Notes: generated by a model from the letters alone, not told the origin. A stretch of DNA of 64,000 bases from Macrostomum lignano (GCA_002269645.1 NIVC01000864.1:248001-312000), one strand, 5' to 3'; positions 5,641-37,334 are shown, counted from the stretch's first letter. Program-made: numbers and translations.

Positions 5641-5696
5641 AATATAGCAATGAGATTCTCCCCCAAATACACAACTATAGCAATGAGATTCTCCCA

Positions 5697-5981
5697 TCGG
5701 TTAGTTCGCACCATCGCTTTTTGTCCTTAGTGACTAGCTTAGAAGACACACTCGAGGCTAGAATATAGACAAGACCGTTAGACAAACTGCTGGACACGTT
5801 AGCAGCGGAAATGGCAATCACTGCTATCCACATTTCAGGTACATTGAGAGCCATATACTGGCTGTAGATGTTCACCGAAGATTGGTTGGTGACAGCCATT
5901 TCCGGACAGGAGTAATACATGTAGCCGTTTAAATCGGTGCAGTTGCCTCCTGTTTCCATGTAGTGAAGACTGTAGACAGGC
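5697..5981 (-). pseudogene. CLCA-like copy B, last coding exon (part downstream of the Polinton), 3'-truncated at a satellite
   Basis: VYSLHYMETGGNCTDLNGYMYYSCPEMAVTNQSSVNIYSQYMALN is homologous to the last exons at 26035-26520, 43663-44189 and 62096-62670. Confidence 0.9.
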
Positions 5982-6020
5982 AGTAGTAGGCATTGGGGGG
6001 CTTTTGGGACAAAATTTTTC

Positions 6021-6390
6021 ACCTCCTCCATAATCTCATTAAATCCATCCATAATATCCCCAACAGAATCAGAAAAAAAGGGGGTCCTACTTGCTCCGAA
6101 AACGTCATCCATAATCCACCTAAATCCATCCATATTATCCCTGAAGAAAAAAAGGGGGGTCGCACTCGCTCACAAAACGTCCTCCATAATCCACCTAAAT
6201 CCATCCATATTATCCCTGAAGAAAAAAATTGGGTCGCACTTACTCCGAAAACGTCATCCATAATCCTTCTAAATCCATCCATATTATCCCCGACAGAATC
6301 AGTGCATAACAGGTGTCCTACTCGCTTAAAAAACGTCCTCCGTAGTCCACCCAAACCCATACATAATCCACTAACATCCACCCGGAAACA
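6021..6390 (+). repeat. About 5 tandem 74-82-bp repeats inside the left TIR
   Basis: Recurring aaaacgtc(a/c)tccataatcc..ctaaatccatccatattatccc unit. Confidence 0.9.
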
Positions 6391-6522
6391 ATCAGAAAAT
6401 AATCTGCATTCTTCTCCCCACGGGGCCCACATTCAATTTGCAATTCGCAACGCATCCCAAAGACTTTAAATTATCAGCGCAGGGTCCTTACCCATTGAAA
6501 AAAATCTAAATTCTCAATAAAA

Positions 6523-6765
6523 ATGTTTCCAGTTGTCTCTCCGGGTTCTTATTATACTCAGCCCCATCCATTGTACAAATCCAAGTACCGATGCAAACTT
6601 GAATGCAGCGAGTACATGAGAAAATATTGGCCTGGTGTTGATTTCAATGTCCCGAATACTAATCTAGCACTTAAATCTCACTGGTTTTATAAGTACATGT
6701 ATGGAGTAGTCATTAACGATTACGACAGCTACTATAACTTTGCTGAAATCATTAGACAGTTGTAG
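6523..6765 (+). CDS. 80-aa TIR-embedded Polinton ORF, function unknown
   Basis: Preceded by caataaaaATG like the other Polinton genes. Intact and Tyr/Trp-rich. Its last 14 codons and stop are duplicated in the right TIR. Confidence 0.5.
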   Translation: MFPVVSPGSYYTQPHPLYKSKYRCKLECSEYMRKYWPGVDFNVPNTNLALKSHWFYKYMYGVVINDYDSYYNFAEIIRQL

Positions 6766-6807
6766 TTTTTTTTTAGTTTAGTTTAGTTTTTTTTCTCAAT
6801 GATCAAC

Positions 6808-7240
6808 GTCAAAATCATGTGCAACATAAAGTGACTCTTATTGGTTACATTAATTTGACGAACGTTCGTAAAAATCATGTGCAGCATAAAACGGCTCGTA
6901 CTGGTTACATTTGTAAGCGATAGTAGCTTACTGATAGTAAAGCTATTTGAACATGGCGCGAATTCCTCACATGGTGGACTAGAAAATGTCGCCATGTGCA
7001 AGGGCGCATAAATAGCAGTTCCACTCAGCTGGCTAGAAGTGGAGCCGACCTCGCGTGGCTATGACTGACTGACGAGGGCAAAAAAGCCCAAAATCGGTCT
7101 CAGTCTGCCCCGCATGGTTCGATTCCCACTGATAACATTAATTTGACGAACTTTCGTAAAAATCATGTGCAGCATAAAGCGGCTCTCAGTGGTTACATGA
7201 TTTTTACGAACGTTCGTGAAAATCATGTGCAGCATAGAGA
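6808..7240 (+). repeat. Subterminal imperfect repeats (aaaatcatgtgcagcataaa / ggttacattaatttgacgaacgttcgt)
   Basis: The motif recurs at ~6811, ~6872, ~7158 and ~7219. Confidence 0.8.
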
Positions 7241-7418
7241 AAAAAGCTTGCCCAGCTCAAAGATTCCTTAACTAGCTCAAAGTATCCCTCGCCTAGCTTC
7301 ACAAACGCCCATTTAGTTCCTTGTTTAAACCCCCAGCCTTCTCAACCCCCAGCTCTTTCAGCAGTCAGCCTAGTTCTTTACTTGGCGCGTGCAATACAAA
7401 GCCCACCCCGCCCTCGGC

Positions 7419-8445
7419 AACAACAAACAACAACAAAATACGCGGCCCCGCATGCAAAGTCAGTTAGAGCAGGGCGCGTCAGATGGCGCGCCGCAGAGCC
7501 TGGGAGCGAACGAAATCCGCTCCGTTGGCAGTGTCGGGCGCCCCCAGCGTCGCACAGCAGGCAGTCCACGTATCGACGGGTTCGGGCCTGACCCCGCCTG
7601 AACGGGCCCTGCAAGGAGAGCAGCAGGACGTCCTGAACAGGTTGGGGGCAGTAGCCCTCGGCCCGGATCACGTGGCCCGCCAGTTGGAGTCGCCGTCGGC
7701 GCAGGATGGTGGACGGGCGCTGCAGCTTGGCTCGATCGTACAGGGCCTCGGTCCCGACGCTATCGTCAGCTCGAAAGGCCGCACGGAGCAGCCCTGAGTG
7801 CGCCGAGTCCAGCTGCCACTCCAGCGTAGCCGTCAGCGTCCACATCTCGGCGTTGTAGAGCAGGACGGTTTCGACCACCGCCTGCCACAGCCGAGCCCTC
7901 TGGCGGTCGGGCAGCGCTTCGGACTGGAGGACGGCTCGGATCGAACGAAACGCCGCACAGGCAAGTCCTCTGCGCCGCCGGAGGTCTTCTTCCACGTGGG
8001 GCACCAGACCGCCGAGGTAGGTGAACCGCTGGCAGCGTGCGAGCCTGGTCGTCTGCCCGTCTGCGCCGCGGCATGTCAGGTCTGCTGGGATGTCGGCCGG
8101 CACAGTCAGCACCTCGGTCTTTAGCGTGTTGACAACCAGACCGACGCTCGATGCTACCTCCACCAACCTGTCGATCTGGCGCTGGGCGCCTCCAACAGAC
8201 GAGGACAGGAGGGCGAGGTCGTCGGCGTAGCCAAGCACGCTTAGGCGCTTTTCGCCGTGGCGGCGACCGATGCGTCTGCGCAGCAGGAAGCCGTCATTAG
8301 CCGAGGGGAGTGCGGTCCGAAGCACCCAGTCCAGGAGCAGCACGAAGAGGAACGGCGCCAAAGTGTCTCCCTGCAGAACTCCTGATGAAGTGTCGGACAG
8401 GTCAGACAGGCCGTCCGCCGTCACCACAGCAGCTCGAGTATCGCA
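7419..8445 (-). mobile_element. 5'-truncated RTE-like LINE nested in the Polinton
   Basis: RT motifs GVLQGDTLAPFLF, LGYADDLAL and FTYLG. (GTT)n-type 3' tail at 7419-7435. 9-bp TSD GCCCTCGGC at 7410-7418 and 8446-8454. Confidence 0.88.
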
Positions 8446-8454
8446 GCCCTCGGC

Positions 8455-8804
8455 GCAAACCCCCAACCCCAACTTTGTCTTACCAAAAACAACGCCTTGA
8501 TTTCCTAGCAATCGACTCACGAAATCCACTGGAAGTCCCTATATTGTCTAGTCTCCTAAGCATTTCTTTGTCCCACCGATTCTTCTCCTCAGGAAAATCT
8601 CTATATTTAACGTCATGCCACATGCAGACAGAGTCTAGCTTGTTCACAGGCTCATGTCCGGGATTTGGGTTGTTGTTTTTATCCAATTGTATTTCAAGTG
8701 GATTCAAAGGCCCACAATATTTGTACCCGGGAACTGTCCAGCCTTTGTTTGGATGAGGAAGCTTTTCTATCAGTCCATGTGAATCTATTTTACCACCAGA
8801 GCAT
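8455..8804 (-). pseudogene. Polinton parvovirus-VP1u-type phospholipase A2 (PLA2X-like), frameshifted and LINE-interrupted
   Basis: SGGKIDSHGLIEKLPHPNKGWTVPGYKYCGPLNPL...PVNKLDSVCMWHDVKY contains the Ca-loop YxGP and catalytic HDxxY. The ATG at 8804 is out of frame by one base. The C-terminus ..KTKLGLGV is in another frame and probably continues past the LINE to ~7340. Confidence 0.85.
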
Positions 8805-8848
8805 TATTTTAAATTAAAATTATATTTAAAATTTTCTTTTTTTTTAAA

Positions 8849-9886
8849 ATGACAGATCAGAAACTAAAAAAACGCAACTACAGCGACAAAGGATTCTTTG
8901 TAGGAAAAAATGCAGACACCAAACTCGCAGAACTAAGTAAGGAACCAAAAGCTAAAGTAGAGAAGTGGCTCTCTAAGCAAGCAGTCTACCAAGTCTATTT
9001 CCCACCTGTTCAATTTACAAGACCTCACTTTAACATCTATAAACCCAATGAGGCACACCAAGCAGACTTATTGTTTCTCCCCAATGACTCGGGTTACAAG
9101 TATGCTCTCACAGTTATAGACATTGCCTCCCGCTATAAGGAAGCGAGACCACTGAAAACAAAGAAGTCAGAAGCAGTTGCAGCCGCACTCCAAGATATTT
9201 ATAAAAACTCACCCCTTAGTTACCCCCAAATCTTTATGACCGGCCCGGGTAAAGAATTCATGGGTGCAGTGAAATCACTTCTACATAAGTATGACGCAAC
9301 AGTTCGCTACGGAAGAACTGAGCTACACAGAGACCAGGCTTTTGTGGAAAGATTCAATTTAACTCTAGCCAAGAGGCTATTCACAAAGCAGACAGCTGAA
9401 GAGCTGAAACTAAAAAGTGGCCAGTACTATACAAAATAGACAGAAAGACTCCTCACTGTTATAGAGCAACTTAACAATGAAGTCACACGCATGACTGGAT
9501 TGAAACCGTCCCATGCAATTAAACAAGACACTGTCGAACTTAAGGCATCTCACAGAACAGACAACAACACGACAACCCCACACAACACGCACAACACAAA
9601 ACACACCTCAAACTACCCTAAGCTTCCAGGAGTTGAATCACCATACATACTGACAAGCTCTGAGTTTCTACGCTTTTTATATCTACCTGGAGAGCTAGAG
9701 AAGGACACTAAAAGAAGAGCTACAGATCCATACTTCAGCCTCGATGTACATAAAATAGACAGACATTTTACCTCCAACTCTGGAGACTACTACTTTTTAT
9801 CTCAGGCGTTTAACCCTAAATCCCCCACACGGTCATTCAATAGAGCTGAACTCCTAGTGATACCAGCCGACACAGAAATTAATTAA
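8849..9886 (+). pseudogene. Polinton retroviral-type integrase with an in-frame stop
   Basis: HQADLLFL, YALTVIDIASRY, FMT(G)PGKEF (second catalytic D reads G) and VERFNLTL. A TAG at 9437-9439 falls where KW is expected, and the frame continues TERL...LNNEVTRMTGLKP. No chromodomain. Confidence 0.92.
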
Positions 9887-9902
9887 AATATTAAAATAAA
9901 AA

Positions 9903-10343
9903 ATGACAAAGATTGGAACCAGAACCATCAATAAACTCAATAAAATCATTGAATCAAAGAAACCAGGTCTTATATCAATTAAAGGAGTCAAAGTTAAGGT
10001 TGATCCCACGAAGCAAATAGTTCAATGTAATGAGCAAAGACACAGCATCACAGATGAAAAGTCAGGAGGAATCCTACCATTAGCAGCTCTTATCCCAATC
10101 ATTGCAGGCGCTGTAAGTGCCGCAGGTGGTGTAGCTGGAGCTGTAGCAACTGCCGTTAAAGCTGGTAATGATAGAGCCCACCAGCTAGAATTGCAAAAGA
10201 TCGCAAGAGACAAAGGTATAACAATTAAGGCAGGAGATGGCTACCCCGATTTTGATGATCGTGATGATTCTGTAAGCAAGTCTGACATTGTCAAAGCCAT
10301 CATGACACTGCACAATGCTGGGTTTACAATAATGCGCATGTGA
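9903..10343 (+). CDS. Polinton small protein with an adenovirus pX/mu-like GGILPLAALIPIIAGAV hydrophobic segment
   Basis: Basic N-terminus, then SGG|ILPL..LIPIIAG..SAAGGVAGAVATAV, resembling the GG|FLPALIPIIAAAIG segment of adenoviral protein X precursors. Intact, with aaaaATG context. Confidence 0.65.
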   Translation: MTKIGTRTINKLNKIIESKKPGLISIKGVKVKVDPTKQIVQCNEQRHSITDEKSGGILPLAALIPIIAGAVSAAGGVAGAVATAVKAGNDRAHQLELQKIARDKGITIKAGDGYPDFDDRDDSVSKSDIVKAIMTLHNAGFTIMRM

Positions 10344-10466
10344 TGAGGTTTAAAACCCCACTTTATCCAGCTTCATAAACCTAACGTTACTGATGGGATG
10401 TAGAAACAGTTCAACTTTTCTATCAGGGTGGTCACCCTCAAAATGTTTTTTTATTTTAGAGACAAA

Positions 10467-13400
10467 ATGCCAAAAGCCAATCCAGCAAAAGATTTAGTCA
10501 ACAAATATTTTTCAAAAGGCGTCTCATTTCAAGACAAAAGTAATTTACTAAGAGAAGCATGCAAGCAAAAGTTTAACACCGACCCTGGTCACCTGGGAAG
10601 CTATCAAAAACAGTTGGAAATCATCAATCAATTAGAATCCAACCAGTATGCGCCTATGAAAAATCCTGCAAAGGAACACCAAGAGAAGAGTCGCAACTTA
10701 GTTAATAAATACGAAACTCTCACTGGTGAAAAAGCAAAGTACCCACAAAATAAGCAGGAACAAAAGAAATTAGAGCAATTAATCCATTTAAAGGAGTCGG
10801 AGCTTGCCATTGAAGAGATTAATTTTGCACAGAGGAAGTTTACAGAACATTACATAGAGTACACAATCCCAATTAAGGATACCACCGCAAACATCTACGA
10901 ATATAAAGACAGCATCCAATCAGTTGTTGATCACACACTCAAAACACGCAAGACCTTTAAACTACAGATATCATTCAAGATTGGTTTTATATGCCTGCAA
11001 AACCCACTGAGCATCTCGAGTATTACATGACAACAAAGGCAAAGCCATTCACCCCTACAGACACACTGGATCCTTTCCTTCAAGAAGTCACTAAGAAAAT
11101 TGAAGCGTTTACATCCAGAGGTTCCGGATGGGTCGTAGGAGGGATTCAAAGAGCGACTGTCATGGTCATGAAATATGACCCACTAAAAGCCTCCTCTTAT
11201 ATAGAGCTCCCGCAAAAGCTATCTGGCAAAAAAGCTTGCATAAATGTTAAAAATAAAGACAATTGCTGTGCCCTATGGGCAGTTCTTTCTGCACTTTTTC
11301 ATGATAGTGTCCCTCACCACCCCGAAAGAACCTCAAATTATCAAAATTATTTCAACTACTATCTCATCGAATGCGAAAAGAAGGGAATCAGGTTTGACAA
11401 AGGAGGCTTGGCGATCTCTCAAATTCCAAAGCTAGAAGAAGTGTTTAATAACAAAATTCGAATCACAGTCTTTGAATGGAATGAAAAAACTGAGAAAGTT
11501 CAACCGGTCAGATGTAGCAAAGACGTTTTAGATCCTGAGGGGAAAAGGCGGACTGAAGTGGATCTTCTAGTGATTGGTAATTTACTAGAGGAGGCTCACT
11601 ATGTTTGGATTAAAGATCTTTCAAGACTCATTCACAAGCAGTTGAATAATCATCACGAGGCTGTTGCCATCTGCCGCTTGTGCCTTAAGCATTACAGTGG
11701 ACCTGAACGCTTTGAAAAACTAACAGAGCATGAATTATCATGTGAGGATCACCCCACCAACTGCTCTCTTCCTTCAGCTGAAGAGAAGTATCTCCGGTTT
11801 AAGAACTATCACAAGATGGAGAAGCTCCCATTTGTTGTATATGCTGATTTCGAATGCTCAATCATGCCAGAGACTCAAAAACAAACTCAAACTCAAAAAC
11901 AAAATCAAGCTCAAAAACAAAATCAAACTAAAAAACATGTCCCCAATTCAGTAGCATATGCCTTTATTACCGTTACAAAAGGACTTGTTGAGTATAATTA
12001 TTTCTTTGGAGAGCAGTGTGTGGAGCAGTTTATTGCCAGAATGTTAGAGTTGCAAAGAGTGATTAGCACCCTTCAACCTGTTCCAATAACTATGTCTGAG
12101 GAGGATGAAAGCAATTTCCTATCAGCAACTCATTGCCACATCTGCAGGAAACAGTTAACTTGCTCTGATATTAAAAACCCCACCGTTAGGGACCATTGCC
12201 ACTATACTGGGAAATTTAGAGGTGCAGCGCATAACACCTGTAATCTAAAGCTAAAATCAAACATTTATGATCTAACGATATTTTGTCACAACGCAAAGAA
12301 CTATGACATGCATTTAATAGTTGAAAAAATCGGCATGATTCCAGACATACACCTTGATTGCATCGCAGAGAACAAAGAGAAGTTTAAGTGTGTTGATATT
12401 AAGTAGGATAATTCAGGTAAAGGTAAAATAAGACTGAAGGATTCATATCAATTTCTAGCTGCCAGTCTAGACGCACTAAGTAAGAATATAAAAGATGAAC
12501 AATGTACATATACAAAGATATTTACAGGTGATAACCAAGAAGCATTTAAACTCCTGAGAACCAAAGGCTTCTACCCCTATGAGAATATTACTGGTTATCA
12601 TGTTTTTGAAGAGGGACTGCCGCCACAGGAGAAGTTCTTTTCAAAGCTAACAAACTCTGGAATCTCTGACAAAGACTATGAGCACGCGAAGCATGTCTAT
12701 AATTACTTTAATTGTCAAAACTTCTTCCAATATCACCTGCTTTACCTCTACACAGATGTGTTTCTGCTGGCTGATGTGTTTGAAACCTTCAGATACACCT
12801 GGTACACAGCATATGGCCTCGATCCAGCACATTATGTGTCTCTGCCCGCCACTAGCTGGGAATCTTTGCTTAAAATGAAATGGGATCAAGACCCAGATTG
12901 GTACATTGAACTTCTTACAGACATTGATATGTACAATTTTGTCGAATCGTCAAAGCGAGGGGGGATCTCAATTTGCACCCATAGATATGCAAAAGCAAAC
13001 AATCCCTACATTGAATCTTACAATAAGGAGCAGCCCTCAAACTACATTACTTACTTGGACGCTAATAATCTCTACGGGTGGGCGATGAGTCAAGATCTTC
13101 CAGTTAGAGATTTTCGATGGCTACCCTTATCAGAACTAAAGTGGGACTTTTCATTGGCTGCCATTTATGAGGTTGATGTTTACATTCCACCAGAGCTTCA
13201 CGACTATTTCTCTGACTTTCCACCCTTCCCAGAGAACATCAAGTGCCCGAAAATAATCGAAACTCCCAATGGAACTTGGCACCTGTCAGGAACAGAAAAA
13301 GAACATACAGAGAAACTAACACAGAATCTAAACAACAAGACACGTTACAAAATTCATTACAAACTGCTTCAGTATTTTATCTCACTTGGTTGCAGGGTCA

Positions 13401-14282
13401 CCAAAGTTCACAGGGCTCTTACATTTACAGAGGAAGCGTGGATGAAACCCTACATTGATAAGAACAACCAGTTTAGGACCAAAGCAACCAACGACTTTGA
13501 CAAGGACCTCTTTAAGTTGGCCAACAACTCTGTCTATGGCAAGACTCTTGAGAATGAGCGGAAAAGAACAAACCTGAAGCTTGTTACCTCATTCAAAGAA
13601 CTCCATATCTTTAATAGCTACTTAGGTGTGATCATATTTTACAAAACCAAAGTGACGCTGCGCAAGCCGATCTATACAGGTGTCACTGTTCTCGACGAAT
13701 CAAAACGTCTGATGTACCAGTTCTTCTATGGCATGAAGCAGCAGTACAAGGATAAAATGAAACTCTTGTACACTGACACGGATAGTTTTATTATGGACAT
13801 TCAAACAGAAGACATTTATCAGGACATGCTGCAGCAAAAAGATTTGTTTGACTTGTCTGAGTATGATGAATCTTGCAGGACACAGAATGGCGATCAAGTG
13901 TTTGACGCCACTAACAAGAAAGTGATTGGGAAAAATGAAGGACGAGATTGCTGGTGACATAATCACTGAATTCATTGGTTTGAGAGCAGAATCCTTTTTT
14001 GTAAAATGTGAGTCGTCAGACCCAATTAAAAAATCAAAGGGAATTCCGAAACACGTGGTTAGGAAGGAACTTAATGAAGCTGAATACAGAGACGCCTTGA
14101 ATTGCAACAAAAAGACATCACATGAGTTCTCAAAGCTACAATCTAAAAACCATATTATTCACACAATTCAGCATAAGAAGATTGGACTGCCAGGTGCAGA
14201 TAACAAGAGATTCATTTTTGATGACAACATTAACAGTCTACCGTTCGGGCACTGGAGATTAGGTTCGGGCACTGGAGTTTAG
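10467..14282 (+). pseudogene. polB: Protein-primed family B DNA polymerase (pPolB) with an endonuclease-VII-like insert
   Basis: ExoI YADFEC, ExoII FCHNAKNYD, ExoIII TDVFLLADVF, PolA YLDANNLYG, PolB KLANNSVYGK, PolC YTDTDS and the RDHCHYTGKFRGAAHNTCN insert. Frameshifts near 11000 and 13930; in-frame TAG at 12404-12406. Confidence 0.95.
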
Positions 14283-14321
14283 ATTTAGGTTTAAGAGAAA
14301 GTTTAATAAACCTCATAAAAA

Positions 14322-14722
14322 ATGACAACAAATAACTTTCTTGAAGATTTGGCTATCGAACTGGAAATCCCAAACTTTAGAGGAATATTTATGAGGGACA
14401 CTCTGCCTGATTTTCCTCTAAGAAAAGAATGCGGCATCATGAACTTTGACACCACCGATAAGCCAGCATCTCATTGGGTTTGCTGGGTGATTGACCCCGA
14501 TCGCAAGCACAAGTGTTATTATTTCGATAGCTATGGGACGGCAGTACCAGAAGAGCTAAGAAATTATATGAAGGGAAAAAGTAATAAAAAAATTACCACT
14601 CAGACTTTATTCTCCAAGGTCTTAGCAGTGATATTTGCGGTGAGCTGTGCATGACTGTTCTGTATGCAATGACCAAAACACGAAAGACCTACAAGGAAAT
14701 TATCCGTACCTGTGTTTCATAA
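14322..14722 (+). pseudogene. Adenain-like cysteine protease (PRO), one frameshift
   Basis: FRGIFMRDTLP, SHWVCW and YYFDSYG, then after a shift in an A-run (~14585) QGLSSDICGELC. The H/D/Q/C catalytic set is present. Confidence 0.92.
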
Positions 14723-14762
14723 GGGTTCATTGTGCTTTTCTTGCCGCATTTCTTGCCGAATT

Positions 14763-15425
14763 TCATTCCGCATAATGTTGAAGAACTTTCTCGAGTTCAT
14801 TTCTCAGCTGACTCATGTCATCAGTACCGACCATGTTCAAGTTCATTCGAATTGATTGTTCATAAAGATCCTGAATGGTTTTGAACTCATCCTCTGAAAT
14901 GAACTTATCCTCGATTGCCCTTGAAATGTACCCTATGATTGATGTGTGCACCCCTTTCTCTTTTACTTGCTTCTCCTGTAGCTGCTTTAGTTTTTTTCGC
15001 CTGTTTCGCGCTAATGCTCCAGTAATTGCTGAAATAAGTCCACATGCAGCACCCACAGAACCGAGCGGGATTGCGATTGGAATTGTAATGGCTGGCAACG
15101 TTGAGACAGCTGCAGCAGACCCAGTTAGAACAGACACAGATCCGAGAGTAATATTACTGTAGTCGAAAAATTTACAGTGAGCATTGTAGCGCTTAATTTT
15201 CTTTGTGTTGTTGAAAATCTTTTTTTCAAGATCATCTCGCATTTTTTGAATCTCCACCAGTCGAAACTGCTGAGAGTTACATGAAATGATGGGGTAGAGT
15301 TTTTGCTGCTCATACTGAGGTGCACTAGGAGCTGTGGGAGCTGTGGGAGCATTCGGTGCCATTGGGTTTGGTGCTGTCGGTGTTTTAGGTTCAGACTGAT
15401 CGTATAGAGTATTTTGTTGGGCCAT
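14763..15425 (-). CDS. Conserved Polinton/adintovirus-type protein with a hydrophobic hairpin and ISxAIEDxxISEDEF tail ('GasderminX'-like)
   Basis: LYP...FRLVEI, a long hydrophobic segment, basic RNRRKKLK and ISRAIEDKFISEDEFKTI. Intact 220 aa. The family name is from memory of adintovirus annotations and was not verified. Confidence 0.6.
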   Translation of the reverse strand: MAQQNTLYDQSEPKTPTAPNPMAPNAPTAPTAPSAPQYEQQKLYPIISCNSQQFRLVEIQKMRDDLEKKIFNNTKKIKRYNAHCKFFDYSNITLGSVSVLTGSAAAVSTLPAITIPIAIPLGSVGAACGLISAITGALARNRRKKLKQLQEKQVKEKGVHTSIIGYISRAIEDKFISEDEFKTIQDLYEQSIRMNLNMVGTDDMSQLRNELEKVLQHYAE

Positions 15426-15457
15426 TTTTTCCCTAGAAAAAATAAAAAATTATAAAA

Positions 15458-16189
15458 CTACCCGCTTGAAATGACCGGACGAGCAGTAGATTCTGCTTCA
15501 TCAATAGCAATATCACGAAGATTGAGTGTTCTCTCCAGACGATCAAGCCTCCTTAGTATTTTACCCCAAGAGCTATACATTCCGTTTAGATAGCTACTGT
15601 GTGATCCATCGTTTCTCTCTAATGCTTCAAGTCTTTCATTTATTCTCACATGCAATCGAGAATAAGTAATCAGCCGTTCAATTCTGTCACCTGTTAACTG
15701 AGTCCGGAACTCTTCTAAATGCCTCACTTCAACTGTGTTGGTTGCGATGTTTTCTTTAATTCTATCATGCAATGCTGTTGACTGGTTCATGAACTCTTCT
15801 AAATTATTCACTTTAGCTGTGTTTGTGAAAACGCCTGCTTCAAGAATACGCATCCGTCTATCAGTGGAACTTCCCAGAAGATTAACTGACGATCTCAAGC
15901 CGTTGATTAGCGAGACTATCGAAGTTATTTCTGACCTTAGTTCATTAGTTGCGCTTAACAACGGCACATAAAGCTTATCACTTTCAAACTTCTGTCTAGC
16001 TACTTTAAGCCTGAGATCTTCCATGTTCATTTGCAACTGGTGCATGGAGCGCTCTAGGGCTTTCAGTCTGTTTTTATTCAGTTTGATCTCTGGGATCTCT
16101 TCATCAGTGTTAATGTAGCGCTTGTCAAGGAAGGAAGTTGTGAGAGTGTTGTTGCCTGTAGTTGACTCACCTGCAAAATTTACTGACAT
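15458..16189 (-). CDS. 243-aa coiled-coil-rich Polinton accessory protein, function unknown
   Basis: Intact ORF with aaaaATG context and heptad-like L/I spacing, lying between two recognisable Polinton genes. Confidence 0.7.
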   Translation of the reverse strand: MSVNFAGESTTGNNTLTTSFLDKRYINTDEEIPEIKLNKNRLKALERSMHQLQMNMEDLRLKVARQKFESDKLYVPLLSATNELRSEITSIVSLINGLRSSVNLLGSSTDRRMRILEAGVFTNTAKVNNLEEFMNQSTALHDRIKENIATNTVEVRHLEEFRTQLTGDRIERLITYSRLHVRINERLEALERNDGSHSSYLNGMYSSWGKILRRLDRLERTLNLRDIAIDEAESTARPVISSG

Positions 16190-16205
16190 TTTTTAAAATG
16201 AAAAA

Positions 16206-16467
16206 TTAAATTAAAATTCTTTTCTCCTTATTAATCATGACAAACTGATAGGGTTGGTTCCACTTTTCATAGCATATGTTAGCAAATTCCTCCTGTGATA
16301 TTGTTCTGTTAGAGTTCTTTGCTGGATATGTAATGTGAGCTGGGGCAATGACCTCATTATAAAACCGTTTCAGTCGATCCTGTGGTATGGTTGGGAAAAG
16401 GAGAATCAAATTACAGTTACCTCTAATTGTTTTATTTGGCAGTTCAAACCAGTTTTGGGCAATGGTT
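16206..16467 (-). pseudogene. C-terminal remnant of the A32/FtsK-like packaging ATPase
   Basis: TIAQNWFELPNKTIRGNCNLILLF...EEFANICYEKWNQPYQFVMIN matches the post-Walker-B part. Walker A and B are absent, replaced by the insert starting at 16468. Confidence 0.8.
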
Positions 16468-17510
16468 GGTTATTCGTAAGTGAGACTTTAGGATAATAGT
16501 CCGGCTCATCCGTCCCAGATCGCCACCTGAGAGGCAGATGCCGCAAAGGGAGGGACGAACGAAGCAAAGATTTCCGTCATGAGCCGGACTATTATCCTAA
16601 AGTTTCACTTACGAATAACCGAATTGTCGAATTTCAGTGGGGCCATAGACAAAAAGGGCATCGAAAGGAGAGAGGGGTTACCGAGGAGAGAGAGACATAA
16701 AGACTGAGGTGGTTTACTGGAGTTTGGGCCATAGACAACGAAGTTGCAAACAGGCTGGGGGTTAAGAGGGTGGAAAGGAAGGAGATGTGGAGAGAAAGAG
16801 AGAATAAAACGTAAATAGCTACATTCGCTTGGCCATGGAGAACCAGACGTCATATCCAATCAACTGGGGCAATCTGCCTGTCGAAAGTTTAGCCAACGTA
16901 TCTAGCAGCGAACTCAATTGGATCTCAAGACTTTCCACATCTCAGAAGGACATGAAGGATAACGAAGACTTTTGAACTTCTTGCACTTTCTTGAGACCTG
17001 GAATCGGCTGGGCATTCGATGAGCGAGATCATGGCTATCACGGGTCAAAAGTCCGAGAGCACGGTCCGGCGCTACCTGGCAGTTAAACGGGACAAGTCCC
17101 TGCAACAATGCAGCGATGCAGTGTCGCGTGCGTTGAACATGGGACAAAGCGCCGCGACCCACGGTCAAGTAACAATGCCTGCTGACATCAGCATCCAAAG
17201 TTCCATCGTGCAAGAAGCAGTGAGCGTGTCTGATGGTCGTCAGATGAACGGTCGGAATATCTTTATTATGAACAACTACACTTTCAACAATTGCAATCTG
17301 TAATGGTCTTCGGCACTATGACAATTGCGCCATATTGATACTGCACAATTAACTTTCCATAGCGCTAATCTTTTGTTGTTGGTGTTTGCTGTTTTGTTCT
17401 AAAAATAAGCGTCCATTATCCCGAGTTTGAAATCATTATCCTGAAGTTTAAGTGAAAAAATAAATAAATGTGCTCATGGTTTAACCATAGACGATTGCAT
17501 TATCCTAAAG
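16468..17510 (+). mobile_element. Non-autonomous Crypton-like tyrosine-recombinase element nested in the Polinton
   Basis: YR C-terminal box LESAGHSMSEIMAITG(Q)KSESTVRRY at ~16995-17075. 42-bp inverted repeat at 16468-16509/16579-16620. The 12-mer ctttaggataat is inverted at 16486-16497 versus 17499-17510. The right boundary is uncertain. Confidence 0.65.
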
Positions 17511-18090
17511 GCTGATTTTTGACAATGTCTATGTCCCTATCGAGAGCAAAGGTAACAAGATCTTTGTAATTTTTGAACTGAATTTTTGACGAGGGGGGTT
17601 GCAGATCTCTAGTCATGTAATTAAGTAAAGTTTTAGTGTGGGGGATTCTTTTAGTTTCTGCGCCTTTATTGATTGAAATATTTTCCGTTGTCAATTCAAT
17701 GTTGTAATCCACCGGTTCTCCGGTAATTTTTTTTCGCCAGGCGCTAATTCCAAAAATATATTTTCCATCATCCGTCACGGGGCCAAAAAAGTTATCCGTC
17801 ACTTTCATCTGCACTGGTTTTCCTGGTTGCTGAGGCTGTGGTTGTCCCGGTGAAGATGGGATTTTACTCAATGTGTTTTGCAACTGGCTCTCTTGAATAT
17901 CATCAATTGCTTCCTTCACAGTGTCGATGTTTTTCTTCGCTTCTGTGTATCCGGGTTTGTGAAATTCGGTGGCTGCTTGGACGAATTCATTGTAAGATTG
18001 TTGTTCTTTGTTGATTAGTCCGGTAACTCGTTTCTCTGCCTGCGCCAGCTTTTCTAGTTCAGAGATATGATATGAACTTTTCCGCTTCAT
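17500..18090 (-). pseudogene. Polinton accessory ORF, probably C-terminally truncated by the Crypton-like insert
   Basis: aaaaATG start and DNFFGPV..DGKYIFG..ISI..TKTLLNYM..P..FKNYK pattern. The stop codon lies within the insert's attatcctaaag motif. Confidence 0.65.
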
Positions 18091-18118
18091 TTTTAAATAT
18101 TTTTTCTTTTGTTGAAAA

Positions 18119-19414
18119 ATGAATGATCCCCTGACACCGGTTTTCTATAAGATTAACAAACCTATTTTGAGTGATGACAGCACTATTAAAGCGACACAAG
18201 TTAGAGTTCAGAGTCACGAGAACCAGAATGAAACTAATCTTGGTCCTGGCCAAACACTGACTTTCACATACAATGGTTGTTCGTCATTGGTCAGTGTCCA
18301 CAGTCTAAGAAGTGGATTCTACATGACTTTCCAATTCAAGACAAAAGGCGGAGACGATGCTGCTCATGCCAATGACGATAAGCACAATGCAAATGTGGCA
18401 TTGATCAGTAACTTCTGGGGGTACATGTTCAAAGAGTTTAGCGTGTCGAATGGAAGCACAGAGTTGGAAAGAATAGCAAACTTTGGTGTGGTCTATGATA
18501 CCCAGTGCTTGATTGAGAACCCGGATTTTATTCAGATGGGGAGCGGTGCTGGATTCATCCCCAATGAGCAGACAGAAGATGAGAATGACCCCGGTTACAA
18601 AAAGAGAAAGGAGAGATACAATTACCCTCTCGTGGCTGCAACTGATGCTGCAAGGAATGCACTGTATAGGTCCGTAGACATTTTTGTGCCGTTAAGATTT
18701 ATGAGCGGTTTCTGTAATAGTTTTAATCGACTGACAAGCAATTTTAGCTACACATTTAGACTGACTAGAGATGATCGGAACAGAGGAATTTTGTCAGGGG
18801 CCGATTATACATCGATGGAGATTAAGCTTACTGGAGTGGAGCTGTACTTAGAAATTATTGAGCCCAAGACTGCACTCAAAGCTGAATACTTGAAGGCGAT
18901 TGAGAAAGACATTGATGTTGCTTATACAGCTTATATGTGCAGAGATGAGCGGAATGACGCAAGACACAATATCTGCATTAAAGAGGGCTCCTGTAGCAAT
19001 CCAAGGTACATTATTGTCACTATGAGGAATACGACTAATGTAGGTAGATATTTTCATGGAAACGTTCGATCTGTCTAGCATGAAATCAGTGATAATTTAT
19101 ACCCTGCATTGCCACAGAATGGAGATTTCCCAGAGAACAAGATTAGTAAATTTTACAATGAACTGTCAGACCTGGCTGTCAAAGAGAATAACGGTATTGT
19201 TTTGACAACCTTGCAGTATAAAAAACTATATCCAATATTTGGTGTTGATGTGACTGCTAGACAAATGCCTACAGACAATAGCCCTGTTAACATTGTGACT
19301 AATATCGAGCGGAAAGAATTTTGTGCCGCAACGGCTGTTGATCTGTTTATTATCTACGCGTTTGAAAGGAAAATCAAGGTCAATATGATCAATAACTCGT
19401 CTAGTAAAGTTTGA
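18119..19414 (+). pseudogene. Major capsid protein (double jelly-roll, hexon-like) with one in-frame stop
   Basis: About 430 codons; SDDST...NLGPGQTLTF, ISNFWGYMF..FSV..G..LE, IFVPL..MSGFC, LELYL..I.P. TAG at 19076-19078, then same-frame continuation to 19414. Lies directly upstream of the minor capsid gene. Confidence 0.82.
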
Positions 19415-19434
19415 ATAATTTTTTTTCAATAAAA

Positions 19435-20301
19435 ATGGAAGCCATAGCCGAAAGACTAAACAACATTGTTTCACACTCTAAGGAGAGCATTCCTATTACA
19501 ATAACCGGGCGAATTAATGACTCAAACGGGATATTTGTTGAAAAATTAGAGCAGACGATTCGCCTGGATCCAGGTGCTAATTACCATGTCTATCTTAACA
19601 ACTTCACTGGTTGGTCAAACGTTCCCAATGTGACGGCAGCAAATAATAAGTTTCATTACAAATGGAAAGGAGCAGCAGCAGATCCTGTGGCATTCCCTGT
19701 GAGCACGCAAAGTGTGGATACCTACAATTACTTTCTAGAAAACGTCTTTACTAAAAGAGGCCATTTTGAGACACCTGATGCGAGTAAGCCAGATAAAAAA
19801 CTGTTCCCTGTCAAACTAACCTATGATCTCACTGTAATGAGAGTGGTCATGCAAGTTCACAAAGATGCGGATGTTGAGTTTAAAGATGACACTTGGTATA
19901 GGGAACTGGGATTCGAGAAGACAGTTTATAAGGCAGAATCCGCGGCGCGGACCGCCACTCAAGCGTCGGGGGCCGTTAGAATGGCCCGGGAAAATGTAAG
20001 CGGTTTGTTCTTAGCACCCAATATTGCAGACATTGTAAAGGGTTTGAATATTCTAATCAGAAGTAATCTTAGTCTTGATTGGGTATTTAAGGGAAAGCGA
20101 ACTAATATTTTATACAACATCTCCAACTCTGTAGCTGGAGGACAGATGCTGGTAGAGAAACCAAATCCCATGAAAAGAGTTGTATTGAGTAATAAGGAGA
20201 TTCACGAGATTGTGCTACAGTTTGAGACTGAAGATGGGGTGGGTGTTGATTTCAACGGTGAAGAGTTTGTATAACTGACGTTGATCATTGAGAGAATGTG
20301 A
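19435..20301 (+). pseudogene. Minor capsid protein (penton-like) with a premature stop near the C-terminus
   Basis: IRLDPGANYHVYLNNFTGWSNVPNVTAANNKFHY pattern and VDFNGEEF. TAA at 20272-20274 is followed in frame by LTLIIERM*, ending inside the right TIR. Confidence 0.82.
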
Positions 20302-20392
20302 GAAAAAAAACTACAACTGTCTAATGATTTCAGCAAAGTTATAGTAGCTGTCGTAAAAAATTTGTCCCAAAAGCCCCCTCATGCCTACTACT
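20276..20392 (-). repeat. Polinton right TIR (short form, lacking ~700 bp present in the left TIR)
   Basis: Direct junction ...tcgt|aaaaaatttgtcccaaaagccccctcatgcctactact joins the inner and outer TIR segments. Confidence 0.9.
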
Positions 20393-21240
20393 ACAGGCAC
20401 TTCTGTTGGCGGTAATTTTGATGCTCATAAGCGTCAGAGTGCAGCAGATATTTGGAAAACTGTCTACTCTTTGAACCGGATTGTGTGTTTGGTCACTTTG
20501 TGGCGTGAAGAATAAATGTTTCTGTACAATTCATATGTCAGCTTGTATTTCAACAATCAGCAGAGCTGCTGCAAGCGTTACACCTACCTTCTTTAGGCGG
20601 GAGTAGACCAGACGGATCTTCGACTGCAGGATTCCATTTGATTTCAAATATTTTGCTCGCGTCATTTACGTTACTTTCATAGATATCCATAACTTTTTCA
20701 GGAATAACACGACGTCTGTCAAAGTTGGTGTCCTCCGCTTGAACAGTCAAAGTGTTGATACGAGTTTGCATTCGGAACGGGTGCGTGATAAACACAGTGA
20801 CAGCGTATTGACCAGCTTTCTGTACTGCATAGAGGGGTATTATGGCGCTGTATGCTTGTTTATCTGTACGAAGAAAATGTGAGTAATACGAGTTTTAAAT
20901 CGTTATTTGAGAGTAGCAGGTTTAATACAGATACTGAATGTTTAGTCTTTACTCACTGCGACGTTGTTGGAATATACAAAATCGAGCCACAATTCTGTGT
21001 CGCCTGATTTGAAAACTGCGTGCATGCGATACTGAATTTTGGGATCTAGTAGCAGATTCACACGGACATCGATTGAAGTCATACTTGACCATTTTCACAT
21101 AGTTTGGTTTCACTTTAATGGTAGAATCTTCAGGAAACCAGAATAGCGAATTTCCGGTTAAAACTAGCTGAGCTTGTGAGGCCGCCTGTCTGCGAATCCG
21201 GCGTGCGAGACCGCAGGTTCGCCAGCGTCCACTTTCCGCT
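20393..21240 (-). pseudogene. CLCA-like copy B, upstream exons (SGKW exon, beta/FnIII exon, first 10 nt of the last exon)
   Basis: Homologous to exons of copies C, D and E. Acceptor ccaacag|aagtgcctgt at 20402. A 5-nt deletion relative to copy D in the SGKW exon shifts the frame. Confidence 0.88.
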
Positions 21241-21355
21241 CTGTTGGAGTGGCGGGTTTGAGGCAAGGCGATTTCTATTGGTTTAAGTCTAAAAGTTTAT
21301 GTAATTATGGGTCTTAGTAATTACCAACTGCCTTAATAATTTATTTCTATTTTTG

Positions 21356-21660
21356 GCTCAGGACTACGAGGTCTGCCTGCAGCTGCACAATTTTCTGCTG
21401 GCCACTCTGCAGCGCCTCGGCTTTGAGATCAACTGGGCCAAGACTCAGAGCCCAGCCACTTCGGTCACTTTCCTGGGTATGCAGATCGACACATTGACTT
21501 GAGAAGATAGACGGCCTTCGAGAACTTCTCCAGGACTGCGCCAAGTCAAAGAGCCTGCAAAAACCGAACTGGTTCTGCAAAGTTGCCAAACCCACAAAGG
21601 CCCTGCTCCGCGCGCTGCTGGAGATAACCATCGCTATTCCTGAGCAGCATCATCGAGACC
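21356..21660 (+). mobile_element. DIRS/Ngaro-type reverse transcriptase fragment
   Basis: LLATLQRLGFEINWAKTQSPATSVTFLGMQIDT, then LQK.NWFCKVAKPTKALLRALL, matching DIRS/Ngaro RT domains 6-7 and the following helix. Confidence 0.75.
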
Positions 21661-21714
21661 AAATTGATCAGGTTATTGATCAGGACCAAGGCCTCATGCT
21701 CTCTTCCTCATGAA

Positions 21715-37203: not shown

Positions 37204-37334
37204 GAATTAGGTATGATGTGCACAACCTCAATCAGAATACATCTGGTAAGACACAGATAAAATGAATTTATAAAGCCAAGGAATTCTTGTTCATTATGAT
37301 TTTTCGGCTTTTGTCCTTGGCTTGACTTAATGTA

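What the first reader, a model, noticed from the sequence alone, without database searches (positions are those of the whole stretch)
5976..20398. Polinton/adintovirus with both ends intact, integrated inside a CLCA coding exon
Seen: AGTAGT...ACTACT termini and a perfect 6-bp TSD (ACAGGC). The insertion lies within the first 10 nt of the last exon of CLCA copy B, and the uninterrupted site survives in paralogues C and E. Gene order is TIR-ORF > <PLA2 INT> pX-like> pPolB> PRO> <hairpin protein <coiled-coil <ATPase <unknown MCP> mCP>. Known: this is the virus-like Polinton complement with capsids. Inference: a once virion-competent endogenous virus that knocked out one member of a redundant gene family.
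Basis: partly seen in the sequence, partly recalled or inferred. Interest (0 to 1): 0.7.

Follow-up and report, generated by a model that had tools for sequence, protein, structure and literature searches.

The report
Decayed Polinton virus in flatworm genome
This is a real but thoroughly broken copy of a Polinton/adintovirus-type DNA virus, fixed in the genome of the flatworm Macrostomum lignano inside the last exon of an already fragmentary CLCA-like gene copy; it is an ordinary example of a well-known kind of element in a host where it seems not to have been described.

Summary
A 14,411-bp element (window 5982-20392) has AGTAGT...ACTACT ends and a perfect 6-bp duplication (ACAGGC). Three paralogues in the window show the uninterrupted site.

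The window is Macrostomum lignano assembly GCA_002269645.1, contig NIVC01000864.1, bases 248001-312000, shown by 100% identity over 22 kb.

All Polinton hallmark genes are present and now have named support:
- rve integrase
- family-B protein-primed polymerase
- adenain-like protease
- A32/FtsK-type ATPase (remnant only)
- double-jelly-roll major capsid protein
- penton
- parvovirus-type PLA2
- adenovirus pX-like protein

The copy is dead, because all seven core genes are broken. I count 5 in-frame stops, 2-3 frameshifts, 3 nested insertions, loss of about two thirds of the ATPase gene, and about 0.7 kb missing from the right terminal repeat. So "both ends intact" is only partly true.

However, copy B is only a 3' fragment with no first exon, a truncated last exon and an inverted 3' flank. 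A "knock-out of a working gene" is therefore not shown.

Verdict: new member of a known kind, modest interest.

The parts
5976..5981 (.). Left copy of the 6-bp target-site duplication (ACAGGC on the + strand; GCCTGT in gene orientation)
   Evidence: present once in paralogues C and E
5982..6811 (.). Left terminal inverted repeat, about 830 nt, starting AGTAGT. It contains four ~75-nt tandem repeats (6021-6378) and the 80-codon ORF listed next.
   Evidence: sibling L010 carries the reverse complement of its inner part at its right end
6523..6765 (+). Open 80-codon ORF inside the terminal repeat ('TIR-ORF'); no family match
   Evidence: Against sibling L010: 50 codons compared, 28 identical, 10 synonymous-only differences, 12 amino-acid changes. 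This is a weak hint of coding constraint.
6807..7236 (.). Subterminal array of ~60-nt repeats with palindromic cores, interrupted by a small foreign insert of about 0.2 kb
7378..8529 (-). ORF of a nested, 5'-truncated non-LTR retrotransposon fragment. The segment is G+C-rich (0.6-0.7, against 0.4 for the element).
   Evidence: RVT_1 E 3.8e-9; composition
8459..8797 (-). Parvovirus-type phospholipase A2 gene (broken: 1 in-frame stop, no in-frame ATG upstream of the domain, 3' end adjoins the nested retrotransposon fragment)
   Evidence: PF08398 E 1.6e-6, above cut-off; homologous to residues 70-162 of the 169-aa PLA2 protein of L001
8849..9886 (+). rve integrase gene (broken: 1 in-frame stop)
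   Evidence: PF00665 E 5.3e-9; a single-frame match to 100% of the 316-aa integrase of L001; stop count
9903..10343 (+). Adenovirus protein-X-like core/membrane protein gene, open (146 codons)
   Evidence: PF05829 Adeno_PX E 1.6e-7, 31.5 bits against a cut-off of 25; homologue in L001
10428..14282 (+). Protein-primed family-B DNA polymerase gene (broken: 1 in-frame stop and 1 frameshift in the conserved part; one more frameshift if the upstream 200-codon ORF is its N-terminus)
   Evidence: 16,060 representative relatives, the best about 50% identical and 1200-1300 aa long. ExoI, ExoII and motifs A, B, C sit in columns conserved in 17-20 of 20 relatives. The family profile matches a PF03175-positive polymerase at hhalign probability 97.9%, E 6e-13. 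Lesion counts.
14322..14662 (+). Adenain-like cysteine protease gene (broken: 1 frameshift)
   Evidence: Two frames against the 130-aa homologue of L001. The family profile A5 hits adenovirus proteinase 1avp at E 5.8e-5 and ASFV S273R at E 3.2e-4. Intact homologues give Peptidase_C5 at E 2.6e-4 to 0.04.
14763..15425 (-). Open 220-codon ORF with a hydrophobic hairpin; function unknown
   Evidence: homologous to the 180-aa ORF of L001 (E 3e-13)
15458..16189 (-). Open 243-codon coiled-coil ORF; function unknown
   Evidence: its N-terminal part is homologous to the 218-aa ORF of L009 (E 8e-16)
16206..17499 (-). Packaging ATPase gene remnant together with about 1 kb of foreign DNA. Only the C-terminal quarter of the gene is left and there is no Walker A motif in any frame.
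   Evidence: Matches residues 175-242 of the 264-aa ATPase of L002 (E 2e-16), which passes Pox_A32 (32.7 bits against 22.8). Foreign segment with a 42-nt hairpin and higher G+C.
17500..18090 (-). Open 196-codon ORF, divergent neighbour of the capsid gene; function unknown
   Evidence: Homologous to the 231-aa ORF in the same position in L009 (41% identity, E 7e-39)
18119..19414 (+). Major capsid protein gene, double jelly-roll (broken: 1 in-frame stop)
   Evidence: 11 homologues of 422-438 aa, up to 73% identical. Intact homologue P0001 passes PF21738 (33.8 bits against 27). Its AlphaFold model matches only double-jelly-roll capsid proteins: PBCV-1 Vp54 E 1e-10, Sputnik, SGIV, faustovirus, ASFV p72, PRD1 P3. 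Stop count.
19435..20301 (+). Penton (minor capsid) gene (1 early stop relative to homologues; otherwise full length)
   Evidence: 13 homologues of about 278 aa. Model pLDDT 57.9. Foldseek best PDB hit is the mavirus penton at E 7e-3, followed by the PBCV-1 penton and adenovirus penton base. BFVD gives 12 hits at E<=1e-3, mostly minor capsid proteins, and lower down adomavirus LO5 and a MELD-virus penton. Stop count; the stop is not shared by sibling L010.
20276..20392 (.). Right terminal inverted repeat, 117 nt, ending ACTACT. It lacks about 0.7 kb present in the left arm and in sibling L010.
20393..20398 (.). Right copy of the 6-bp target-site duplication
5678..5981 (-). Host: distal part of the last exon of CLCA-like copy B (open, but truncated relative to paralogues)
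   Evidence: tblastn of M. lignano proteins P0013, P0015 and P0017 (57-64% identity); homology to C and E stops about 200 nt in, and the flank beyond is inverted
20399..21296 (-). Host: the first 4 nt of the last exon with its acceptor (CAG at 20403-20405), plus the two preceding exons of copy B
   Evidence: splice model taken from annotated paralogue D (P0012, about 99% identical to D's exons)

Best explanation
Window 5982-20392 is an endogenous, inactivated copy of an adintovirus-like Polinton/Maverick element in the germline genome of the flatworm Macrostomum lignano.

How it got there. Elements of this kind replicate their linear DNA with their own protein-primed family-B polymerase. Their retrovirus-type (rve) integrase inserts them into chromosomes and leaves a 6-bp duplication. 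They can build an adenovirus-like particle using:
- a double-jelly-roll hexon-type capsid protein and a penton;
- an A32/FtsK-type packaging ATPase;
- an adenain-like maturation protease;
- a pX-like core protein and a PLA2 entry protein.
Here the integrase cut a GCCTGT that forms nucleotides 5-10 of the last coding exon of a CLCA-like paralogue (copy B).

What happened afterwards. The copy decayed neutrally:
- five nonsense mutations and two or three frameshifts;
- a non-LTR retrotransposon fragment next to the PLA2 gene;
- about 1 kb of foreign DNA replacing most of the ATPase gene;
- a small insert in the subterminal repeats;
- loss of about 0.7 kb from the right terminal repeat.
It can neither replicate, integrate nor form particles.

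Shown versus inferred. Shown: the structure, the duplication, the empty paralogous sites, the gene identities and the lesions. Inferred from the family's established biology: the mechanism of replication, integration and particle formation.

Polymerase class. The polymerase is of the type that Pfam PF03175 does not recognise. This fits the 'Beta' class of Starrett et al. 2021, while the virion module carries PLA2 and pX. Such mixed pairings are already reported.
For: Ends, duplication and empty sites.

Host identity: the window is 100% identical over 22,077 bp to NCBI GCA_002269645.1 contig NIVC01000864.1. Paralogue D is about 99% identical to BOX15_Mlig029287g1.

Hallmark genes:
- rve, PLA2 and Adeno_PX pass Pfam cut-offs.
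- Polymerase: 16,060 relatives, conserved family-B motifs, and a profile link to a PF03175 polymerase at probability 97.9%.
- Protease: the family profile hits adenain 1avp at E 5.8e-5.
- ATPase: the remnant is homologous to a Pox_A32-positive protein.
- Capsid protein: PF21738 on the 73%-identical intact homologue, and Foldseek hits only to double-jelly-roll capsids.
- Penton: hits to mavirus, PBCV-1 and adenovirus pentons and to giant-virus minor capsid proteins.

Synteny with relatives: the order polymerase then protease, and the unknown ORF next to capsid then penton, recur in metagenomic and IMG/VR relatives whose ORFs are intact.

Lesion counts.

The internal stops are real. Terminal stops use all three stop codons, so no alternative code is in play.

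Rough consistency check (inference). The two repeat arms differ at about 3 of about 117 aligned bases. That predicts about 4-5 nonsense mutations in about 2,850 core-gene codons; 5 are seen.
Against: - Both AlphaFold models are of low confidence (pLDDT 54 and 58, TM-scores about 0.3). The fold evidence rests on the coherence of the hit lists rather than on good superpositions, and for the penton it is only moderate.
- No hit carries the name of a classified adintovirus except weak BFVD rows, so placement inside Adintoviridae and the Alpha/Beta call are inferences.
- An OTU-like domain of the polymerase and a chromodomain of the integrase, both used in the 2024 definition of adintoviruses, were not detected by Pfam.
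- Junctions are taken from one assembly; read support was not checked.
Confidence: 0.9

Rival explanations
1. The insertion destroyed a working CLCA-like gene: copy B was expressed and functional until the element split its last exon.
For: - The three exons of B that exist are open in the expected frames.
- The acceptor CAG of the last exon is intact.
- The target lies in coding sequence.
- Exons and introns of B are no more diverged from D than those of the evidently intact copies C and E.
Against: - No counterpart of exon 1 (signal peptide plus first domain, 88-95% conserved among C, D and E) lies between B and the 3' end of C. Nor do any CLCA_N or VWA exons.
- Homology of B's last exon to its paralogues ends after about 200 nt. 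B therefore lacks the Ser/Thr-rich stalk and the hydrophobic tail.
- The 3' flank is inverted relative to C and E.
- So at least two rearrangements unrelated to the element also disable B. Their order relative to the insertion is unknown.
Confidence: 0.2
2. Assembly artefact or contamination: DNA of a free virus was joined to host sequence by the assembler.
For: - Relatives with intact genes occur as free contigs in several sequencing data sets.
- Read support was not examined.
Against: - The duplication is perfect, and three paralogues show the exact empty site.
- Host-type G+C-rich retrotransposon sequence and other foreign DNA are nested inside the element.
- All core genes are degraded. 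That is what a long-resident chromosomal copy looks like, not a replicating virus.
Confidence: 0.02
3. The copy is still functional or nearly so, a 'virion-competent' provirus.
For: - The tips of both terminal repeats are present.
- Five accessory ORFs are open, and the penton is almost full length.
Against: - Polymerase, integrase, protease, ATPase, capsid protein, penton and PLA2 each carry at least one disabling lesion.
- The ATPase has lost its Walker A region.
- The right repeat is shortened.
- The openness of the accessory ORFs is not significant. About 2.5 lesions would be expected in their 885 codons, giving a chance of none of about 0.08 (my own estimate from the counts).
Confidence: 0.01

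Closest known systems
Adintoviruses (Starrett et al. 2021, PMC8502044; Buck lab preprint 10.1101/2024.03.25.586562)
   Same: - Animal host and linear-genome architecture with terminal inverted repeats.
- Core genes: family-B polymerase, rve integrase, adenain-like protease, FtsK/A32-type ATPase, hexon-type double-jelly-roll capsid protein and penton.
- Accessory parvovirus-type PLA2 and adenovirus pX-like sequences.
- A polymerase not recognised by PF03175 fits their 'Beta' class. PLA2 fits their 'Alpha' virion module. The 2024 preprint reports mixed pairings.
   Different: - PLA2 and pX are separate genes on opposite strands here, not the fused 'PLA2X' of the paper. An IMG/VR relative, L021, does have the fusion.
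- The OTU-like and chromo domains were not detected.
- This copy is chromosomal and dead, not a free genome.
- The two adintovirus papers read here and the literature searches turned up no flatworm host.
Polinton/Maverick self-synthesising transposons (Kapitonov and Jurka 2006; Pritham et al. 2007; from my own knowledge)
   Same: - Length in the 15-20 kb class.
- 5'-AG...CT-3' ends, long terminal inverted repeats and a 6-bp target duplication.
- Polymerase, integrase, protease and ATPase core.
   Different: Nothing essential. It is a degraded member with nested insertions.
Mavirus virophage and its endogenous copies in Cafeteria
   Same: - rve integrase with host integration.
- Double-jelly-roll capsid protein plus penton. 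The best solved-structure match of the penton model is the mavirus penton 6g41.
- Cysteine protease and FtsK-type ATPase.
   Different: - Protist host and dependence on a giant virus.
- Only remote sequence relation: fold-level, E 7e-3, from a low-confidence model.
Adenoviruses
   Same: - Protease profile hits adenain 1avp.
- pX-like protein.
- Penton-base-like fold hits.
- Protein-primed family-B polymerase.
   Different: - Adenoviruses have no integrase, terminal-repeat transposition or PLA2.
- Their genome is much larger.

Membership tests
Polinton/Maverick | Terminal inverted repeats with 5'-AG...CT-3' ends | tested here: met
   AGTAGT...ACTACT. The outer 38 nt are 92% complementary and the next 54 nt 100%. 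The right arm is shortened.
Polinton/Maverick | 6-bp target-site duplication | tested here: met
   ACAGGC on both sides; present once at the homologous site in paralogues C and E
Polinton/Maverick | Protein-primed family-B DNA polymerase | tested here: met
   Conserved Exo and Pol motifs; hhalign probability 97.9% to a PF03175-positive polymerase. There is no direct Pfam or PDB sequence hit. The gene is broken.
Polinton/Maverick | Retrovirus-like rve integrase | tested here: met
   PF00665, 36.7 bits against a cut-off of 32.6; the gene has one in-frame stop
Polinton/Maverick | Adenain-like (clan CE) cysteine protease | tested here: met
   The family profile including the window's ORF hits adenovirus proteinase at E 5.8e-5. 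Peptidase_C5 reaches 21.2 bits on homologue L016, just below the 21.3 cut-off. The gene has one frameshift.
Polinton/Maverick | FtsK/HerA-type (A32-like) packaging ATPase | tested here: inconclusive
   Only a C-terminal remnant is left. It is homologous (E 2e-16) to a protein that passes Pox_A32. No Walker A motif is present in six frames.
Adintovirus / virus-like Polinton | Double-jelly-roll major capsid protein | tested here: met
   PF21738 is passed by the 73%-identical intact homologue. The window's own largest open piece scores 21.9 bits, below the cut-off of 27. All top 50 Foldseek PDB hits are double-jelly-roll capsids, with E down to 1e-10, but the model pLDDT is only 53.6.
Adintovirus / virus-like Polinton | Single-jelly-roll penton | tested here: inconclusive
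   The hits are coherent but weak: mavirus penton E 7e-3, adenovirus penton base, and giant-virus minor capsid proteins at E 1e-5. The model has pLDDT 57.9.
Adintovirus (definition of the 2024 preprint) | OTU-like N-terminal domain on the polymerase | tested here: inconclusive
   No OTU family hit in Pfam for the window's pieces or for intact relatives. Remote-homology methods were not available.
Adintovirus (definition of the 2024 preprint) | C-terminal chromodomain on the integrase | tested here: inconclusive
   No Pfam hit in the C-terminal part of the window's integrase or in L001's integrase
Adintovirus (definition of the 2024 preprint) | Hexon reciprocally recognisable by BLASTP with reference adintovirus hexons | not testable with these tools
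   No named adintovirus sequences could be retrieved.
CLCA (host gene) | CLCA N-terminal metalloprotease-like domain plus VWA domain in the same protein family | tested here: met
   M. lignano relatives P0017, P0018 and P0020 of the paralogues carry PF08434 and VWA domains. Neighbouring copy A gives a weak PF08434 hit, E 8.7e-4.
CLCA (host gene) | The interrupted copy B itself encodes those domains | tested here: not met
   B aligns only to about residues 620-860 of the 971-aa protein P0017. No CLCA_N or VWA exon lies between B and the next gene.

The most novel reading that the evidence does not exclude
The locus may be a fossil of a still-circulating adintovirus lineage of Macrostomum or other small aquatic animals. 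Relatives with fully open capsid, penton, pX, PLA2, integrase and ATPase genes occur in at least ten independent sequencing data sets, and one of them has 20x coverage. The lineage would have two unusual traits:
- a roughly 830-nt terminal repeat that carries a conserved small ORF, and therefore a gene present in two copies;
- PLA2 and pX split into separate genes.
Probability: 0.3. Interest if true: 0.45.

Novelty: new member of a known kind. Interest (0 to 1): 0.3.

Why it matters
The finding adds a free-living flatworm, and a laboratory model, to the hosts with a well-delimited capsid-bearing Polinton. The copy has exact ends, a target duplication and paralogous empty sites. This gives a clean reference for annotating the family in Macrostomum genomes, where about three quarters of the sequence is repeats (a figure from my own knowledge). 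It is also a dated example of how such elements decay. It does not change what is known about how Polintons or adintoviruses work, and the claimed gene knock-out is not established.

Tried and rejected
- Alternative genetic code as the reason for the in-frame stops. All five are TAA or TAG, but the genes' own terminal stops use TGA, TAG and TAA alike. Rejected.
- Introns as the reason for the interruptions. Homologues align straight through the stops in one frame, without gaps. Rejected.
- 'The left repeat gained a 0.7-kb insertion'. Sibling L010 carries that sequence at its right end, so the right arm lost it. Rejected.
- Direct Pfam or PDB sequence identification of the polymerase. Nothing was found; PHROGs gave only 'DNA polymerase' at E 0.006. 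The question was settled through a profile-profile link instead.
- Pfam identification of copy B's exons as CLCA. No hits. The family name comes from full-length M. lignano relatives.
- Exact look-up of ten window ORFs in the 15-billion-protein collection: none present.
- Names for the best polymerase relatives: none carry a functional name.
- IMG/VR search with the capsid protein: no relatives. With the polymerase: 14 contigs of 4-22 kb.
- tRNA and Rfam scans of the element: nothing at curated thresholds.
- Accession numbers of the data sets holding relatives: found in no paper.
- Other copies of element genes elsewhere in the window: none.
- Exon-versus-intron divergence as a test of whether B was a pseudogene. 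It is uninformative, because all paralogues show exons more diverged than introns.

Full report
OBSERVATION

The left junction reads ...ACAGGC|AGTAGTAGGCATTGGGG... and the right junction reads ...ATGCCTACTACT|ACAGGC.... The element therefore spans 5982-20392 (14,411 bp) between two copies of ACAGGC.

The repeat finder gives an outer inverted repeat of 38 nt (92% complementary). A second arm follows in which 54 nt are 100% complementary.

The window holds three further copies of the flanking gene. The left flank ends and the right flank begins at adjacent bases of copy D (43667/43666). In gene orientation:
- C and E read CCAACAG|ATGT-GCCTGT-CTACAGTCTTC, with the hexamer once.
- D reads GCCTCT at that place.
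- B reads CCAACAG|AAGT-GCCTGT-[element]-GCCTGT-CTACAGTCTTC.
This is a true target-site duplication, not a chance repeat.

SOURCE AND HOST GENE

The joined ORFs of paralogue D find Macrostomum lignano proteins only. Its exons are about 99% identical to BOX15_Mlig029287g1 (P0012).

The genomic locus of that protein (NCBI GCA_002269645.1, contig NIVC01000864.1, 280113-302189) is 100.000% identical to window 32113-54189 over 22,077 bp. The window is therefore bases 248001-312000 of that contig, and the element is 253,982-268,392.

Longer relatives of the paralogues (880-975 aa) carry the CLCA N-terminal domain PF08434 and VWA domains. Neighbouring copy A (3877-5016, + strand) gives a weak PF08434 hit. 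'CLCA-like family' is therefore justified, although the exons of B, C and D have no Pfam domain of their own.

P0012 fixes the splice model. Exon 3 ends ...AAG GCA G|gt and the last exon starts cag|AA GTG CCT.

Copy B is only a fragment:
- It aligns to residues of about 135-420 of the 497-aa short form, or about 620-860 of the 971-aa long form.
- No counterpart of exon 1 exists between B and the 3' end of copy C. That exon is 88-95% conserved among C, D and E.
- Homology of its last exon stops after about 200 nt, which removes the Ser/Thr-rich stalk and hydrophobic tail seen in C, D and E.
- The following 0.7 kb is homologous to the 3' flanks of C and E but inverted.

The sequence does not say whether the element or these rearrangements came first. 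Comparing exon and intron divergence did not help. In all paralogue pairs the exons (79-85% identical) are less alike than the better-conserved introns (up to 92-96%). That is curious in itself.

WHAT THE ELEMENT ENCODES

Left to right, with > and < marking the strand of each gene:
- terminal repeat with an 80-codon ORF (>)
- an array of ~60-nt repeats
- a nested retrotransposon fragment (<RT)
- <PLA2
- integrase>
- pX-like>
- polymerase>
- protease>
- <220-codon hairpin ORF
- <243-codon coiled-coil ORF
- <ATPase remnant with foreign DNA
- <196-codon ORF
- capsid protein>
- penton>
- terminal repeat

Named evidence for each gene:
- PLA2: PF08398 passes its cut-off.
- Integrase: rve PF00665 passes its cut-off.
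- pX-like protein: Adeno_PX PF05829 passes its cut-off.
- Polymerase: no direct Pfam or PDB sequence hit. It has 16,060 representative relatives of about 1,250 aa. ExoI, ExoII and motifs A, B and C fall in columns conserved in 17-20 of 20 relatives. A profile of the family aligns to the PF03175-positive polymerase of relative L001 with hhalign probability 97.9%, E 6e-13, 26% identity.
- Protease: a profile of the window's ORF and four intact homologues hits adenovirus proteinase 1avp (E 5.8e-5) and ASFV S273R. The homologues give Peptidase_C5 at E 2.6e-4 to 0.04.
- ATPase: a remnant only. It matches residues 175-242 of a 264-aa relative that passes Pox_A32.
- Capsid protein: 11 homologues of 422-438 aa. 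The 73%-identical intact homologue passes the double-jelly-roll model PF21738. Its AlphaFold model (pLDDT 53.6) finds only double-jelly-roll capsid proteins among the top 50 solved structures: PBCV-1 Vp54 at E 1e-10, Sputnik, SGIV, faustovirus, ASFV p72 and PRD1 P3.
- Penton: 13 homologues of about 278 aa. The model has pLDDT 57.9. Its best solved-structure match is the mavirus penton (E 7e-3), followed by the PBCV-1 penton and adenovirus penton bases. In BFVD there are 12 hits at E<=1e-3, mostly 'minor capsid protein' of giant viruses. Adomavirus LO5 and a MELD-virus penton come lower down.

The capsid result is solid and the penton result is moderate.

STATE OF THE COPY

These are counts only. 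All seven core genes are broken.
- PLA2: one in-frame stop, no in-frame ATG before the domain, and a 3' end that adjoins the nested retrotransposon fragment.
- Integrase: one in-frame stop.
- Polymerase: one in-frame stop and one frameshift in the conserved part. There is a further frameshift if the unconserved 200-codon ORF upstream is its N-terminus.
- Protease: one frameshift.
- ATPase: about three quarters of the gene is missing, there is no Walker A motif in any of six frames, and about 1 kb of foreign DNA sits in its place.
- Capsid protein: one in-frame stop.
- Penton: one early stop, which is not shared by sibling L010.

The five internal stops are TAG x3 and TAA x2. The genes' proper stops use TGA x4, TAG x3 and TAA x3, so a variant genetic code is excluded.

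Five ORFs are open: the pX-like gene, the 220-, 243- and 196-codon ORFs, and the 80-codon repeat ORF. Given the lesion density this is not significant (my estimate is P about 0.08).

Lesions outside the genes:
- The G+C-rich segment (0.6-0.7 against 0.4) with an RVT_1 ORF is a 5'-truncated non-LTR retrotransposon.
- The ~60-nt repeat array is interrupted by an insert of about 0.2 kb.
- The right terminal repeat is 117 nt, against 830 nt on the left.

Sibling L010 (ENA ERZ27309238, 780 nt) is 92.8% identical to the penton 3' end and the right repeat. It continues into the reverse complement of the left arm's inner sequence. The long repeat is therefore ancestral and the window's right arm has lost about 0.7 kb. 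L010 is itself decayed: 7 indels, 6 of them not multiples of three.

The two arms differ at about 3 of about 117 aligned bases. That predicts roughly 4-5 nonsense mutations in the 2,850 core-gene codons, and 5 are seen. This is an inference, but it is consistent with neutral decay since integration.

RELATIVES

No protein more than 73% identical to the capsid protein exists in the 5.8-billion-cluster collection. For the penton, the only closer sequence is the decayed 90%-identical fragment. Nothing points to intact siblings in M. lignano, but the genome itself could not be searched.

More distant relatives (capsid 42-47% identical) have all ORFs open. They recur in at least ten data sets with the same gene cluster: ATPase, penton, pX, capsid protein, protease, PLA2, integrase and polymerase. 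Their polymerase is the PF03175 type, whereas the window's is not.

IMG/VR holds 14 contigs of 4-22 kb with the window's polymerase type. Two of them (L015, L016) have the protease gene directly downstream of the polymerase, as here. One of the 14, L021, has the fused PLA2-pX gene.

By the definitions of Starrett et al. 2021, Alpha means a PF03175-type polymerase, Beta means a divergent polymerase, and PLA2X is typical of Alpha virion modules. On those definitions the window combines a Beta-like polymerase with a PLA2/pX virion module. The 2024 preprint already reports such mixed pairings.

KNOWN OR NEW

Polintons, Mavericks and adintoviruses are well described. The structure, the 6-bp duplication and the gene set here are canonical.

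Searches for papers holding Macrostomum or Platyhelminthes together with Polinton or Maverick returned only a handful of unrelated papers, and neither adintovirus paper I read mentions a flatworm host. The host therefore appears to be new, but only open-access papers and preprints were searched, and I could not check Repbase. The rating is: new member of a known kind.

VERDICT

- Interest is modest (0.3).

Noticed in passing
window 7051-7121 (+), inside the small insert in the element's ~60-nt repeat array: Weak match to the hammerhead ribozyme family HH9 (24.6 bits against a gathering score of 52, E about 4e-4). It has a CUGAnGAG box and stem II, but an altered GAAA box. It could be a degenerate ribozyme-bearing small retroelement, as known from other flatworms, or chance.
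   Followed up: partly
window 42702-43860 versus 20393-21358, 26316-27480 and 62470-63660: Among the CLCA-like paralogues the exons (79-85% identical) are less alike than the better-conserved introns (up to 92-96%). This suggests diversifying selection on the C-terminal domains, or gene conversion confined to introns.
   Followed up: partly
window 6523-6765 (+): An 80-codon ORF lies inside the long terminal repeat, so intact elements would carry it twice. Against sibling L010 there are 10 synonymous-only and 12 amino-acid-changing codon differences in 50 codons. It has no family match.
   Followed up: partly
window 28786-29316 (-): A MACPF (perforin-like) domain ORF (E 5e-8) lies directly upstream, on the same strand, of the VWA-like exon of CLCA-like copy C. 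It may be a separate gene or a fused architecture.
   Followed up: no
window 21714-22509 (+) and 33234-34594 (inverted): The same satellite (period about 37 nt, 95-97% identical) occurs twice in opposite orientation, once just upstream of copy B. This hints at an inversion that may have removed B's 5' part. Further arrays lie at 23157-24183 (57-nt period) and 24785-25675.
   Followed up: no
window 38000-41000: A strongly A+T-rich block (G+C 0.25-0.30 against about 0.45 around it) has three large minus-strand ORFs of 318, 179 and 408 codons. One has C2H2-like zinc fingers. It is probably a DNA transposon of a different composition class.
   Followed up: no
window 16464-17499: The foreign DNA in the ATPase gene starts with a 42-nt perfect-stem hairpin (16468-16620). 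It holds a 94-codon ORF (17019-17303, +) with no Pfam match, and a similar terminal motif recurs near its other end. It is probably a non-autonomous transposon.
   Followed up: partly
window 47089-50133 (+) and 58689-60658 (-); 53504-55471 (-); 44531-45136 (-); 52278-53186 (-); 35485-37206 (-): - Two copies of one non-LTR retrotransposon, in opposite orientation and 89-94% identical where they overlap (RVT_1 in one, RNase_H in the other).
- An LTR-retrotransposon pol (RT_RNaseH, Integrase_H2C2, rve) and a second fragment of the same kind.
- A DnaJ-domain ORF.
- A 574-codon ORF with a CIDE-N domain.
   Followed up: partly
L001-L008 (ENA ERZ21818093/4; Logan ERR12380052, ERR13065126, ERR12047043/47/48, ERR12380051): An identical 431-aa capsid protein, with a fully open adintovirus-like gene cluster, recurs in at least ten independent data sets. 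One contig has 20x coverage. This looks like a circulating virus or a widespread host-borne element, and the sample origin is unknown.
   Followed up: partly
window 10991-12406 region of the polymerase, and relatives P0035, P0037 and L015: The polymerase family carries an endonuclease-VII/HNH-like zinc-finger insert (PF02945, E 7e-5 to 3e-7) between the ExoI and ExoII motifs.
   Followed up: no
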